A DNA stretch of 63,452 nucleotides, the filler included, from Octopus bimaculoides (Eukaryota), in NCBI RefSeq assembly GCF_001194135.2. It is 7 parts of 7 records of this genome, joined end to end, with 100 filler letters (N's around TTAATTAATTAA, not from the genome) between each part and the next. Parts side by side here need not be neighbours in the genome. Positions count along the whole stretch, not along the records: positions 24,219 to 27,221 come from NC_069009.1; 6 more parts are not named here. One strand, given 5' to 3'. Of the stretch, positions 24,221 to 26,611 are shown piece after piece. A program made the translations under genes and the position numbers. Position 1 is the first letter of the stretch. Each line of letters opens with the position of its first letter. The notes beneath the pieces were generated by a model. The model did not search any database, was not told the DNA's origin, and saw only the letters and a list, made by a program, of their open reading frames with translations.

Positions 24221-26611
24221 AGCAATAACGACGCTGGCAACAAGGACGATGGTGATGGTGATGATGATGACGATGATGGTGATGAGGATGATCATCATGG
24301 TGATGATGGTGATGATAATCCTGATCGTGATGGTGGCAAGAATCATACGCCCAATGACGCTGGAGATACGAACCCAGAAAATTCAGGTGCTACGAAACAG
24401 CTGGCGCCAGAACCGGTGGAGACACCAGCTGTGCCTGAGGATCAGAATGTTAATGAGACAGCAGATGTGGTGGGGAATTTGACACTGAATGGTGGAGATG
24501 CTGGATTCGGTGGAGAGACAAACGAACAGGATGAAGACAGCCAACCGGCATCGGAGGCAGAAGGGAAGCAAAACAGTTTGGAAACATCTGCTAATCCTGC
24601 TGTGAATGCAACCGAAGCTCCAGCTAGGCACCAGCGTAGGCATAGGAACAGACATCACTCGCCGAAGAAGAGGAAAGGCGGGAAACGAGGCAGAAGAGAT
24701 CACGATGAAGAGGATGGAGAGGAAGAGGGAGACGAAGAGGATGGGGAGGAAAGAGAAGAGGAAGAGAAAGAGGAAGAAGGAGGACATGAAGGGGAAGGAG
24801 GACATGAAGGGGAAGAGGAAGAGGAAGGAGCAGAACATGCAGAAGAAGGAGGAGGAGGAGGAGGAGAAAAACAGAAGGGAAACGGAAATAACAACAGCAC
24901 TTCTCTTGATGCGGAAAATGGTTTGACAACGTTCGGAAACGCATCTCAGACAAATGACAACAACGTCGACCACAGCAAGAACAACAATGATAGCTACCAC
25001 AAAGACATAGAGCCTTCGACGACAAGGAGTGACAAAGGAGAGCAGCAGGGGTCAGAAAATGGTTCAAGCCCTGATGAACATTATGGCGGTACCGGTCAAC
25101 GAGGGGAGTTAGATGAGGAAAAGAATGATGTTGATGGTAGCGATGATTACGAGGGCAACGATCACAGCTATGATGATCATGTCGGTGATGATGACGATGG
25201 TAAAGGTAAGGATAAGGAAGATGACAGTAGTGCGGACAGTGGAGGTGAAGCTGACAGTGGTGATGATGCGAATAAGGACAGTAGTGACGGTGGTGGTGAA
25301 AATGGTGAAGGAGAGAAAGAAACAGCAGCATTGACGACAGAAGAATCTGGTCTAGTGATACCAACGACGGCTTTCACGGATGACGGCGAAGTCAAGGATA
25401 ATACGACGGAGACGTCATTGAACACAACGGAGGGTGCGACGAAGATGGCCGCAGGCATGACGGACACCGTGTCACAGCCGACAGAGGATGGCAACAGCCC
25501 GATCTCAGAAGATTCTTCTACGCCAGCAGAAGCAGAGGAAACCGAAAAGGGGGAGGGGGATGAGGGGGACGAAGACGGGGGCAGTGAAGAAGGGGACGGG
25601 GAGAAGGTAGAGGAGGAGGTGGGAGAGGCGGATGGCAAGACGGAAACGAAGGAGCCGCGTGTCGATTCTGACTCAGGGGCTGAGTCTGATCTTCCACCTA
25701 CGAAACTTGGTGAGGAAGGGTCGAGGGAAAATTGGGACTCCGACAATGACGGCTTTGAAAGCGAGGAAAATGACATGTCTGTTGGTACTGAACCTGCACC
25801 TACAACTGTAACAATAGTTGCAGCTGCAGCAACGACTGCAGCTACTGTGATGGCGTCGAAAACACCACCAGAGAACGCAGAGGATAGGGACAGAGAGGGC
25901 TCAGCGTTTTCAGAAGGAGAAGAAGACAACAACGGCTTTGATGATGACAACAATGATGACAGGGATGATGGTGACGACGGTAGTGGTGGTGGGGATAATG
26001 ATGCTGATGACAACGATGACAAGGGTGACAGTAATGACGGAGAAGTGGAAGAAGAGGAGAAGCTTCAAGAAGGGCCAGCTGCTGGCGGGCAGCAATCCAC
26101 CGATTCATCTGAGGTGAGCGATGAGGAAGGGGAGAAGGAGGAGAAAGCGATTTCATTTGATTCGGACAGTGAAGGCCAAAGCTTTGTCGACAATCCCGAA
26201 TTGGAAGACAACGACAACAACAACAACAGCGATAGTAGTAGTAATACAGGTGACACCAACGAGCCGGGGACAGGTGAGAATGAGATGCCTCCTGCACAAA
26301 CTACATATTATCAACTGACACAGACAACGCCACCTACAGGTCAAAATGGGAACACGATGCAGAAGCCTGAAAAGGGTGATGCCAGCGCTGGGAACACTGC
26401 CGACGCGAGTGGCACCATGGACAACAATGATGGTTACGACGGCACGGAAAACAGCAAGACATCTGAACATTCTCACTCCAGGAGGAAAGGAGGCGCCCCC
26501 GGAAGACACAAGAAGAAGAAGGGCTCCGGTAAGACCGGAAGGAAGAAGAGAGGATGGACGTACAAAAAACACGACAGTGACACGCCTGACCAGCGCGGGT
26601 TTCGCAGATGA
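24221..26611 (+). CDS. Asp/Glu-rich low-complexity protein, at least 796 aa, 5' end in gap; probably a large terminal exon
   Basis: The ORF-track ORF (24416) stays open upstream to the gap edge (SNNDAGNKDDGDGDDD...); varied codon usage, purine-rich and GC-richer than its flanks; TGA at 26609-26611; AATAAA at 27040-27045. No homolog recognised. Confidence 0.8.
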   Translation, partial: SNNDAGNKDDGDGDDDDDDGDEDDHHGDDGDDNPDRDGGKNHTPNDAGDTNPENSGATKQLAPEPVETPAVPEDQNVNETADVVGNLTLNGGDAGFGGETNEQDEDSQPASEAEGKQNSLETSANPAVNATEAPARHQRRHRNRHHSPKKRKGGKRGRRDHDEEDGEEEGDEEDGEEREEEEKEEEGGHEGEGGHEGEEEEEGAEHAEEGGGGGGEKQKGNGNNNSTSLDAENGLTTFGNASQTNDNNVDHSKNNNDSYHKDIEPSTTRSDKGEQQGSENGSSPDEHYGGTGQRGELDEEKNDVDGSDDYEGNDHSYDDHVGDDDDGKGKDKEDDSSADSGGEADSGDDANKDSSDGGGENGEGEKETAALTTEESGLVIPTTAFTDDGEVKDNTTETSLNTTEGATKMAAGMTDTVSQPTEDGNSPISEDSSTPAEAEETEKGEGDEGDEDGGSEEGDGEKVEEEVGEADGKTETKEPRVDSDSGAESDLPPTKLGEEGSRENWDSDNDGFESEENDMSVGTEPAPTTVTIVAAAATTAATVMASKTPPENAEDRDREGSAFSEGEEDNNGFDDDNNDDRDDGDDGSGGGDNDADDNDDKGDSNDGEVEEEEKLQEGPAAGGQQSTDSSEVSDEEGEKEEKAISFDSDSEGQSFVDNPELEDNDNNNNSDSSSNTGDTNEPGTGENEMPPAQTTYYQLTQTTPPTGQNGNTMQKPEKGDASAGNTADASGTMDNNDGYDGTENSKTSEHSHSRRKGGAPGRHKKKKGSGKTGRKKRGWTYKKHDSDTPDQRGFRR

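What the first reader, a model, noticed from the sequence alone, without database searches (positions are those of the whole stretch)
24221..26611. Unrecognised acidic, Cys-free, glycosylation-rich protein of at least 796 aa with two His/basic clusters
Seen: one uninterrupted frame with long D/E tracts and no Cys. It has at least ten N-x-S/T sequons (NET, NLT, NAT, NNS, NST, NAS, NDS, NGS, NTT x2), acidic Ser-Gly sites (DSGGE, DSGDD, DSGAE, DGSGG), S-x-E motifs and Thr/Pro-rich stretches. Two basic blocks both contain RKGG (RHQRRHRNRHHSPKKRKGGKRGRR; HSRRKGGAPGRHKKKKGSGKTGRKKRGW). Established: this composition typifies secreted Ca-binding matrix phosphoproteins/proteoglycans (Fam20C targets S-x-E; GAGs attach at acidic SG), and dibasic sites can be convertase sites. 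Inference: a lineage-specific extracellular or biomineralisation protein (e.g. statolith, stylet or egg-case matrix), or an acidic nuclear protein with basic NLS. The N-terminus is hidden in the gap.
Basis: partly seen in the sequence, partly recalled or inferred. Interest (0 to 1): 0.7.

Follow-up and report, generated by a model that had tools for sequence, protein, structure and literature searches.

The report
Octopus-only acidic disordered protein tail
The open frame is real: it is the last 796 codons of an uncharacterised gene so far seen only in octopuses, encoding a very acidic, structureless tail with two conserved basic blocks, probably part of a secreted glycoprotein, and of modest interest.

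Summary
Window 24221-26611 is one open frame of 796 codons plus TGA. It has no Cys, is 28.6% Asp+Glu and 14% Gly, and carries two basic blocks that each contain RKGG.

It is a real coding exon. The whole piece is colinear with an Octopus sinensis contig. Thirteen of 14 coding indels are multiples of three, against 1 of 5 in the 3'UTR. dN/dS is 0.39, falling to 0.18 and 0.12 in the two basic blocks. An AATAAA signal is conserved downstream.

The only protein relative among 1.84 billion cluster representatives is O. sinensis XP_029656327.1, an uncharacterised protein. No Pfam or PDB match was found, and AlphaFold2 predicts disorder.

The clustering of basic residues is significant, and each block holds one conserved furin-type site.

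In O. sinensis the same exon continues upstream into a region with 7 Cys and an excess of sequons. That region matches Pfam VERL_C (egg-coat receptor C-terminal domain) just below threshold. This favours a secreted protein, but no signal peptide was recovered. Tissue and function are unknown, and biomineralisation is untested.

The parts
24221..26608 (+). Open frame of 796 codons, cut off at the 5' edge of the piece. It is the C-terminal part of a long terminal exon and encodes an acidic, Cys-free, low-hydrophobicity polypeptide predicted to be disordered.
   Evidence: Translation. Composition and shuffle test. Colinear O. sinensis orthologue. In-frame indels 13 of 14. dN/dS 0.39 (CI 0.31-0.50), the lowest of all six frames. 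AF2 mean pLDDT 35.6 with no secondary structure.
26609..26611 (+). Stop codon TGA, at the same position in O. sinensis.
24626..24697 (+). Basic/His block 1 (aa 136-159, RHQRRHRNRHHSPKKRKGGKRGRR). It contains a PKKRK-type NLS-like run and ends in the furin-type site RGRR|D (aa 156-159, nt 24686-24697).
   Evidence: Clustering test. Conserved in O. sinensis (RQPNRHKNRHHSSKKRKGGKRERR|D). Local dN/dS 0.18.
24698..24868 (+). Glu/Gly-rich tract (aa 160-216). It is imperfectly repetitive at the DNA level and is a hotspot of in-frame length change between species.
25802..25858 (+). Ala/Thr-rich stretch TTVTIVAAAATTAATVMAS (aa 528-546), the least hydrophilic segment. It is not a convincing membrane span.
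   Evidence: Kyte-Doolittle 19-mer mean is 1.40. The O. sinensis counterpart TTVKIAAAAATTAATVMKS scores 0.81 and has Lys inside.
26474..26557 (+). Basic block 2 (aa 752-779, HSRRKGGAPGRHKKKKGSGKTGRKKRGW), with the furin-type site RKKR|G (aa 774-777).
   Evidence: Local dN/dS 0.12 and 87% aa identity.
26552..26608 (+). Conserved C-terminal 19-mer GWTYKKHDSDTPDQRGFRR, downstream of RKKR.
   Evidence: 17 of 19 residues identical in O. sinensis.
26612..27060 (+). 3'UTR, 87% identical to O. sinensis. It holds a 75-nt block (26687-26761) that is 99% identical, an old internal ~84-nt imperfect duplication, and a conserved AATAAA at 27040-27045.
27087..27221 (.). AT-rich simple repeats (TATACA-like units and (TA)n) at the end of the piece. 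They are not part of the gene product.
   Evidence: The weak mir-297/466 Rfam hits here are far below gathering score.

Best explanation
The frame is the C-terminal ~800 residues of the long last exon of a genuine gene, so far seen only in octopods. Its orthologue in Octopus sinensis is annotated as two adjacent 'uncharacterized' models: a 794-aa model plus LOC115230256 of 202 aa.

The encoded segment is an intrinsically disordered polyanion (29% Asp+Glu, pI about 4). It is interrupted by short conserved islands and by two strongly conserved basic blocks. Each block carries one furin-type R-x-K/R-R site.

By orthology (shown in O. sinensis, inferred for the window species), the tail hangs on a Cys-containing, sequon-rich domain. 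That domain weakly resembles the C-terminal end of the molluscan egg-coat receptor VERL, a ZP-module type domain.

Most likely mechanism (inferred, not shown): the protein enters the secretory pathway and becomes part of an extracellular coat or matrix.
- The acidic tail would act as a hydrated, cation-binding (Ca2+) spacer.
- The two basic blocks would act as proprotein-convertase processing sites, as electrostatic 'stickers' that pair with acidic tracts or other polyanions, or as both.
- Cleavage at RKKR would release a conserved 19-residue C-terminal peptide.
For: Real coding exon:
- A single open frame of 796 codons, against a maximum of 382 in shuffles, with strong codon periodicity.
- The whole piece aligns colinearly to O. 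sinensis L001 8499-11503.
- 13 of 14 coding indels are multiples of 3, against 1 of 5 in the UTR.
- dN/dS is 0.39 (bootstrap CI 0.31-0.50) at dS 0.34. No in-frame stop occurs in the orthologue apart from one 29-nt insertion.
- This is the only open frame and has the lowest omega of the six frames.
- The stop codon and AATAAA are conserved.

Lineage restriction:
- Exhaustive phmmer against 1.84 billion representatives found one hit, XP_029656327.1 (E = 9e-83).
- Word-indexed searches found nothing else.
- Pfam, NCBIfam and PDB gave nothing.

Disorder:
- AF2 mean pLDDT 35.6 with no helices or strands; GRAVY -1.70.

Functional basic blocks:
- Clustering reached by 0 of 2000 shuffles.
- Exactly two R-x-[KR]-R sites, both retained in O. 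sinensis as RERR|D and RKKR|G.
- The lowest omega values, 0.18 and 0.12.

Secretory reading:
- In O. sinensis the same open frame starts at a good phase-0 splice acceptor about 590 nt upstream of where the piece begins.
- Its first 126 aa have 7 Cys and 6 N-x-S/T against 1.2 expected (P = 0.0002).
- That region hits Pfam PF25272 VERL_C at E = 7e-5 to 2e-5.
- Molluscan ZP proteins typically carry a furin site after the ZP module (PMC9290575).
Against: - No N-terminus and therefore no signal peptide was recovered in either species. The O. sinensis model starts upstream of the DNA I could fetch.
- The VERL_C match scores 23-25 bits, below Pfam's gathering score of 27.2. It covers only profile positions 153-231 of 231.
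- The upstream domain lies in the gap of the window species, so its presence there is inferred.
- ZP-module proteins normally have their furin site close behind ZP-C, followed by a hydrophobic patch and a membrane anchor. Here the first basic block lies hundreds of residues downstream and there is no membrane span.
- Sequons, S-x-E and Ser-Gly are not enriched in the tail.
- Both basic blocks also fit classical nuclear localisation signals.
- The O. sinensis assembly has the frame broken by a 29-nt insertion.
- There is no expression evidence.
Confidence: 0.55

Rival explanations
1. An acidic nuclear or nucleolar protein. The two basic blocks would be nuclear localisation signals, and the Asp/Glu tracts would bind histones or other basic proteins, as in nucleoplasmin, nucleolin or prothymosin-type acidic proteins.
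For: SPKKRKGGKRGRR and RHKKKKGSGKTGRKKRG fit the K-K/R-x-K/R pattern of classical NLSs (pattern from general knowledge). The blocks are the most conserved parts. The tail has no Cys and no sequon enrichment. No signal peptide is known.
Against: In O. sinensis the same exon encodes, just upstream, a Cys-containing segment with a fivefold excess of N-glycosylation sequons and a near-threshold VERL_C match. These are marks of the secretory pathway. No Pfam domain of any histone-chaperone or nucleolar family was found, and no homologue exists outside Octopus.
Confidence: 0.15
2. A granin-like or prohormone-like cargo of the regulated secretory pathway. An acidic, disordered, Ca2+-aggregating precursor would be cut at the two basic blocks. 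The conserved C-terminal peptide GWTYKKHDSDTPDQRGF(RR) or other conserved islands would be the active products.
For: Acidic disordered composition. 16 dibasic pairs against 6.4 expected, and two conserved R-x-K/R-R sites. The 19-mer after RKKR is 17/19 identical and ends in a dibasic RR.
Against: Dibasic sites are confined to two blocks rather than flanking many peptides. No Gly precedes the terminal RR as an amidation donor. A precursor with a tail of about 800 aa attached to a Cys-rich VERL_C-like domain would be unusual. There is no similarity to any known neuropeptide or granin family.
Confidence: 0.1
3. Not a functional gene. It would be either a fortuitous open frame in purine-rich low-complexity DNA or a decaying pseudogene.
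For: The sense strand is T-poor, so stops are rare, and shuffles still give open frames up to 382 codons. Much of the DNA is imperfect GAT/GAG-type repeat. The O. sinensis copy is interrupted by a 29-nt frame-breaking insertion. There is no Met in the first 408 codons.
Against: 13 of 14 indels are in frame, against 1 of 5 in the UTR. dN/dS is 0.39, with a CI that excludes 1. Many non-repetitive islands are conserved at the protein level. Both halves of the O. sinensis frame remain fully open, and the half downstream of the insertion has the lower omega. The polyadenylation signal is conserved.
Confidence: 0.05

Closest known systems
Octopus sinensis XP_029656327.1 (LOC115230256, 'uncharacterized protein', 202 aa) together with the adjacent upstream 794-aa model on contig VCDQ01005317.1
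   Same: Orthologue. The DNA is colinear over the whole piece, with about 85% nt and 74% aa identity. The stop codon, both basic blocks, the C-terminal peptide and the 3'UTR are shared.
   Different: In the O. sinensis assembly a 29-nt insertion splits the frame, so the annotation has two genes. The 202-aa model begins on an out-of-frame ATG and places an intron inside the coding exon. O. sinensis also differs by 13 in-frame indels in the aligned coding region and has a (GDGDGSH)n run where the window has a poly-Asp tract.
VERL / molluscan vitelline-envelope ZP-module proteins (Pfam PF25272 VERL_C; ZP proteins as reviewed in PMC9290575)
   Same: The orthologue's upstream region matches the last third of the VERL_C profile (E = 2e-5). 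It is Cys-containing and sequon-rich. Furin-type sites lie downstream of it, as in ZP proteins.
   Different: The score is below the Pfam gathering threshold and only profile positions 153-231 are matched. No VERL repeats, hydrophobic patch, membrane anchor or GPI-like end were found. The furin-type site is hundreds of residues away rather than adjacent. An acidic tail of about 800-1000 aa is not a feature of the ZP proteins described in PMC9290575 or that I know of.
Highly acidic disordered matrix proteins of biominerals (molluscan Aspein/Asprich/Pif80; fish otolith Starmaker/OMM-64; vertebrate DSPP and other SCPP/SIBLING proteins)
   Same: Extreme acidity, predicted disorder, low complexity, fast length evolution and narrow taxonomic range (properties of these families from general knowledge and PMC9290575).
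   Different: No sequence similarity to any of them. S-x-E is not enriched (6 against 9.4 expected). Asp and Glu are balanced and diluted by Gly, Asn, Thr and Ser. There is no evidence of expression in a mineralising tissue.
Acidic nuclear proteins with basic NLS (nucleoplasmin, nucleolin, prothymosin-alpha type)
   Same: Long Asp/Glu tracts plus short Lys/Arg clusters that fit NLS patterns.
   Different: No domain or sequence match. The orthologue has secretory-type features upstream.

Membership tests
ZP-module / VERL C-terminal domain proteins | Profile match to the domain (Pfam PF25272 VERL_C or PF00100 Zona_pellucida) above the curated threshold | tested here: inconclusive
   The window piece itself has no match. 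The O. sinensis upstream part of the same exon hits VERL_C at 23.2-25.0 bits, E = 7e-5 to 2e-5, against a gathering score of 27.2. Only profile positions 153-231 of 231 are covered. No Zona_pellucida hit.
ZP-module / VERL C-terminal domain proteins | Consensus furin cleavage site shortly after ZP-C, followed by an external hydrophobic patch and a membrane anchor or GPI signal | tested here: not met
   Two R-x-K/R-R sites exist, but the first lies hundreds of residues after the domain. The most hydrophobic 19-mer scores 1.40 (0.81 in O. sinensis, with Lys inside). The C-terminus is basic and hydrophilic.
ZP-module / VERL C-terminal domain proteins | N-terminal signal peptide and a ZP-N half upstream | not testable with these tools
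   The 5' exons lie in the gap of the window and upstream of the fetched part of the O. sinensis contig.
Secretory calcium-binding phosphoproteins / Fam20C substrates | Enrichment of S-x-E/pS phosphorylation motifs | tested here: not met
   6 S-x-E against 9.4 +/- 2.7 expected from composition.
Secretory calcium-binding phosphoproteins / Fam20C substrates | Sequence homology to the SCPP/SIBLING families or molluscan acidic shell proteins | tested here: not met
   No Pfam hit. No hit other than the Octopus orthologue among 1.84 billion representatives.
Proteoglycan core proteins | Excess of Ser-Gly with acidic flanks (GAG attachment consensus) | tested here: inconclusive
   SG 8 against 9.2 expected; acidic-flanked SG 8 against 5.0 expected, P = 0.17.
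N-glycoproteins of the secretory pathway | N-x-S/T sequons above compositional expectation | tested here: inconclusive
   Tail: 12 against 9.6 expected, P = 0.25; 9 of the 12 are retained in O. sinensis. Orthologue's upstream domain: 6 in 126 aa against 1.2 expected, P = 0.0002.
Acidic nuclear chaperones (nucleoplasmin, NAP/SET, nucleolin) | Family core domain (nucleoplasmin core, NAP, RRM/GAR) | tested here: not met
   No Pfam family at E <= 10; no PDB sequence match.
Acidic nuclear chaperones (nucleoplasmin, NAP/SET, nucleolin) | Basic NLS next to acidic tracts | tested here: met
   PKKRKGGKRGRR is directly followed by the Glu tract, and a second block lies near the C-terminus. This is a pattern match only and is equally compatible with convertase sites.

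The most novel reading that the evidence does not exclude
The gene would fuse a ZP/VERL-type extracellular polymerising module to a tail of roughly 800-1000 residues that is acidic and disordered like the fish otolith protein Starmaker. Convertase cuts at two conserved basic blocks would regulate the tail. This would be an octopod invention that tethers a Ca2+-binding polyanion into an egg coat or a statocyst (statolith or cupula) matrix. The conserved C-terminal peptide could be a separate released product.
Probability: 0.12. Interest if true: 0.55.

Novelty: new member of a known kind. Interest (0 to 1): 0.3.

Why it matters
If the secreted reading is right, this is a taxonomically restricted matrix or egg-coat component of octopods. 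It would be one more example of how long acidic disordered tails arise and evolve quickly while short basic 'processing or sticker' blocks stay fixed.

There are two practical points:
- The gene appears to be unannotated in the window species: no other protein in the 5.8-billion-sequence collection carries this C-terminal region.
- It is mis-annotated as two genes in O. sinensis. Merging the two models, after the 29-nt insertion has been checked, would correct a public annotation.

It does not open a long-standing question. Without tissue or localisation data, its biology remains a hypothesis.

Tried and rejected
- **Full-length homology search.** The exhaustive search and a search with the C-terminal 143 aa then found only the O. 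sinensis fragment.
- **Search with the O. sinensis Cys-containing domain.** It found nothing, not even the 794-aa model, so the full N-terminus could not be retrieved.
- **Exact-sequence look-ups of the window product.** The 796-aa form and the form starting at Met409 are not on record.
- **Pfam, NCBIfam and PDB sequence searches on the tail.** All empty. The PDB search with the O. sinensis upstream domain was also empty.
- **Rfam.** Only chance-level hits in simple repeats. No tRNA.
- **Membrane-span idea for aa 528-546.** Rejected: Kyte-Doolittle 1.40, and the orthologue has Lys inside (0.81).
- **Antisense ORFs of 205-281 aa.** Rejected as by-products of a purine-rich sense strand. The minus frames have 12-20 stops in the window and 17-29 stop-containing codon pairs in the two-species alignment.
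- **Two metagenome scans for further relatives.** Both empty.
- **Literature searches.** Searches for the locus identifiers and for octopus ZP, acidic or statolith proteins found nothing on this gene. PMC9290575 gave only general background on molluscan ZP proteins.
- **Downstream 10 kb of the O. sinensis contig.** It holds only repeats, with no paralogues.
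Full report
**1. The observation**

The usable piece is window 24219-27221, 3003 nt with no N. From 24221 one frame runs 796 codons to TGA at 26609-26611. Its 5' end is the edge of the piece.

Composition:

| Feature | Value |
|---|---|
| Asp | 14.3% |
| Glu | 14.3% |
| Gly | 14.1% |
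| Ser | 8.2% |
| Asn | 7.9% |
| Thr | 7.8% |
| Cys | none |
| D+E / K+R | 228 / 71 |

The predicted pI is 4.06 and GRAVY is -1.70. RKGG occurs at aa 151 and 755.

The open frame is not a compositional accident:
- Shuffles of the same bases give a longest open frame of 181 codons on average and 382 at most.
- T is 8%, 7% and 30% at codon positions 1, 2 and 3.
- The other five frames carry 12-108 stops.

The antisense ORFs of 205-281 aa are Ser/Leu/Pro-rich mirror images of a purine-rich sense strand.

**2.

Each motif was tested against 2000 shuffles of the protein.

| Motif | Observed | Expected | Result |
|---|---|---|---|
| N-x-S/T | 12 | 9.6 | P = 0.25 |
| S-x-E | 6 | 9.4 | below expectation |
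| Ser-Gly | 8 | 9.2 | below expectation |
| Acid-flanked Ser-Gly | 8 | 5.0 | P = 0.17 |
| Dibasic pairs | 16 | 6.4 | reached by 0 of 2000 shuffles |
| Max K/R in 24 residues | 13 | 6.4 +/- 0.9 | reached by 0 of 2000 shuffles |
| R-x-[KR]-R sites | 2 | 0.08 | P = 0.0035 |

So 'glycosylation-rich', 'Fam20C sites' and 'GAG sites' are consequences of composition, not signals. What stands out is the charge patterning. The two furin-type sites sit one in each basic block: RGRR|D at aa 156-159 and RKKR|G at aa 774-777.

**3. Relatives**

- Pfam, NCBIfam and PDB sequence searches on the 796-aa product are empty.
- The exhaustive phmmer run against 1.84 billion cluster representatives found exactly one protein, P0001. 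It scored E = 9e-83 with 80% identity to window aa 600-796.
- P0001 is XP_029656327.1, 'uncharacterized protein LOC115230256 [Octopus sinensis]'.
- A search with the C-terminal 143 aa again found only this protein.
- Two metagenome scans were empty.

The gene therefore comes from an octopod and has no detectable relative outside Octopus in these collections. It appears to be unannotated in the window's own species.

**4. The orthologous locus**

P0001 lies on O. sinensis contig VCDQ01005317.1. I fetched 21 kb of it as L001. The entire piece, coding part and 3'UTR alike, aligns colinearly to L001 8499-11503.

In O. sinensis the frame is open from L001 7856 to 9979 and again from 10042 to 10971. 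The break is a single 29-nt insertion relative to window position 25672/25673. NCBI's annotation consequently has two genes:
- a 794-aa model ending at the stop created by the insertion;
- the 202-aa model, which starts on an out-of-frame ATG. Its opening 'MSLIFHPRN' corresponds to the window's +2 frame. It also places an intron inside the coding exon.

Both halves remain fully open, and the half downstream of the insertion is the better conserved. The insertion is therefore either very recent, allelic, or an assembly artefact.

**5. Selection**

- Indels: of 14 between the two coding sequences, 13 are multiples of three, the exception being the 29-nt insertion. In the 3'UTR only 1 of 5 is.
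- dN/dS: the Nei-Gojobori estimate over 763 aligned codons is dS 0.34, dN 0.135, omega 0.39, with a bootstrap 95% CI of 0.31-0.50.
- Frame control: the proposed frame has the lowest omega of all six frames and is the only one without stops.
- Constraint is uneven. Omega is 0.5-0.6 in the Asp/Glu tracts, 0.18 in basic block 1 and 0.12 in basic block 2 plus the C-terminal peptide.

The protein alignment shows many conserved islands that are not low-complexity: AVPEDQNVNETADV, SANPAVNATEAPAR, TEGATKM, ESDLPPTKLGEE, ENWDSDN-GF-SEEND, EPAPTTV-I-AAAATTAATVM, DSDSEGQSFVDNPE and PAQTTYYQLTQTTPPTGQNGNT. Both furin-type sites are retained, as RERR|D and RKKR|G.

Nine of the 12 sequons are retained. That is about what 74% overall identity predicts.

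Downstream of the stop, the 3'UTR is 87% identical and carries a conserved AATAAA at window 27040. This is a real, constrained, terminal coding exon.

**6. Structure**

AlphaFold2 on the single sequence gives mean pLDDT 35.6, pTM 0.19 and no helix or strand element. With the composition, this fits intrinsic disorder. A single-sequence run is weak evidence on its own.

The least hydrophilic stretch (aa 528-546) scores 1.40 on the Kyte-Doolittle scale. In O. sinensis it scores 0.81 and has Lys inside, so it is not a membrane span.

**7. What lies upstream (O. sinensis only)**

The long exon begins at a strong phase-0 acceptor...ctcttcctacag|GTG, at L001 7909/7910. That is about 590 nt before the point where the window piece starts.

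Its first 126 residues are not acidic low-complexity sequence:
- They contain 7 Cys and 6 N-x-S/T sequons against 1.2 expected (P = 0.0002).
- They hit Pfam PF25272 ('Vitelline envelope sperm lysin receptor, C-terminal domain') at 23.2 bits, E = 7e-5.
- Adding a plausible upstream exon (L001 1747-2003, good acceptor and donor) raises this to 25.0 bits, E = 2e-5.

This is just below the gathering score of 27.2 and covers only profile positions 153-231 of 231. I treat it as a lead, not as membership.

The Cys content and the sequon excess are classic marks of a protein that passes through the secretory pathway. Molluscan ZP-type proteins typically carry a furin site behind the domain (PMC9290575).

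Against a canonical ZP protein, the first basic block is hundreds of residues from the domain and there is no hydrophobic patch or anchor. The true N-terminus lies upstream of the DNA I could fetch.

**8. Interpretation**

Shown:
- It is a conserved coding terminal exon.
- It is octopod-restricted as far as the databases go.
- It encodes a disordered polyanion with two constrained basic blocks, each holding a furin-type site.

Inferred with moderate confidence:
- It is the tail of a secreted, glycosylated extracellular protein.

Inferred with low confidence:
- The tail acts as a hydrated, cation-binding spacer in a coat or matrix.
- The basic blocks are convertase sites, electrostatic cross-linkers, or both.
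- Cleavage at RKKR would release a conserved 19-mer.

Rivals:
- A nuclear acidic protein whose basic blocks are NLSs. This is not excluded without the N-terminus.
- A granin- or prohormone-like precursor.
- A non-gene or pseudogene, now very unlikely.

Nothing here addresses biomineralisation, egg-case or statolith roles specifically.

**9. Verdict**

In kind, this is another fast-evolving acidic disordered tail on a probably extracellular protein. It is a new member of a known kind, and the locus already sits in GenBank for O. sinensis as two uncharacterised models. Interest is modest.

Noticed in passing
L001 9965-9993 (O. sinensis), opposite window 25672/25673: A 29-nt insertion (CTGTCGAAAACCTGACTGAAGCGATAACA) breaks the otherwise conserved frame. 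Because of it NCBI annotates two genes, of 794 aa and 202 aa. The 202-aa model starts on an out-of-frame ATG and has a predicted intron inside the coding exon. The insertion is probably an assembly or allelic artefact, or a very recent lesion.
   Followed up: partly
window 26687-26761: This 75-nt block of the 3'UTR is 99% identical between the two species, although synonymous sites have diverged to dS 0.34. The whole UTR is 87% identical. It is a candidate post-transcriptional regulatory element.
   Followed up: partly
window 26680-26763 and 26827-26909; also 26614-26641 and 26651-26678: The 3'UTR contains an old imperfect internal duplication of about 84 nt (73% identity). The matching weak secondary hit in O. 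sinensis suggests the duplication is old. The UTR also has a 28-nt direct repeat (93%) right after the stop codon, whose second copy is poorly conserved in O. sinensis. It is not a dispersed repeat within the 21-kb O. sinensis locus.
   Followed up: partly
window 24221-25444: There is no Met codon in the first 408 codons of the open frame. Any gene caller working on the piece alone would miss or truncate the gene, which may explain why it appears unannotated in this species.
   Followed up: no
L001 8500-8610 against window 24221-24330: O. sinensis has a (GDGDGSH)n expansion where the window has a poly-Asp/His tract. All other length differences in the coding region are in-frame and lie in low-complexity tracts, showing rapid repeat turnover under frame conservation.
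   Followed up: partly
L001 7910-8287 and 1747-2003 (O. sinensis): A Cys- and sequon-rich segment lies upstream of the acidic tail and matches Pfam VERL_C just below threshold (E = 2e-5). A candidate upstream exon with good splice sites also exists. The corresponding DNA of the window species lies in the gap.
   Followed up: partly
window 27087-27221: AT-rich simple repeats (TATACA-type units and (TA)n) end the piece. They give chance-level Rfam hits to mir-297/mir-466, far below gathering score. In O. sinensis about 860 nt of similar repeats are inserted here.
   Followed up: yes
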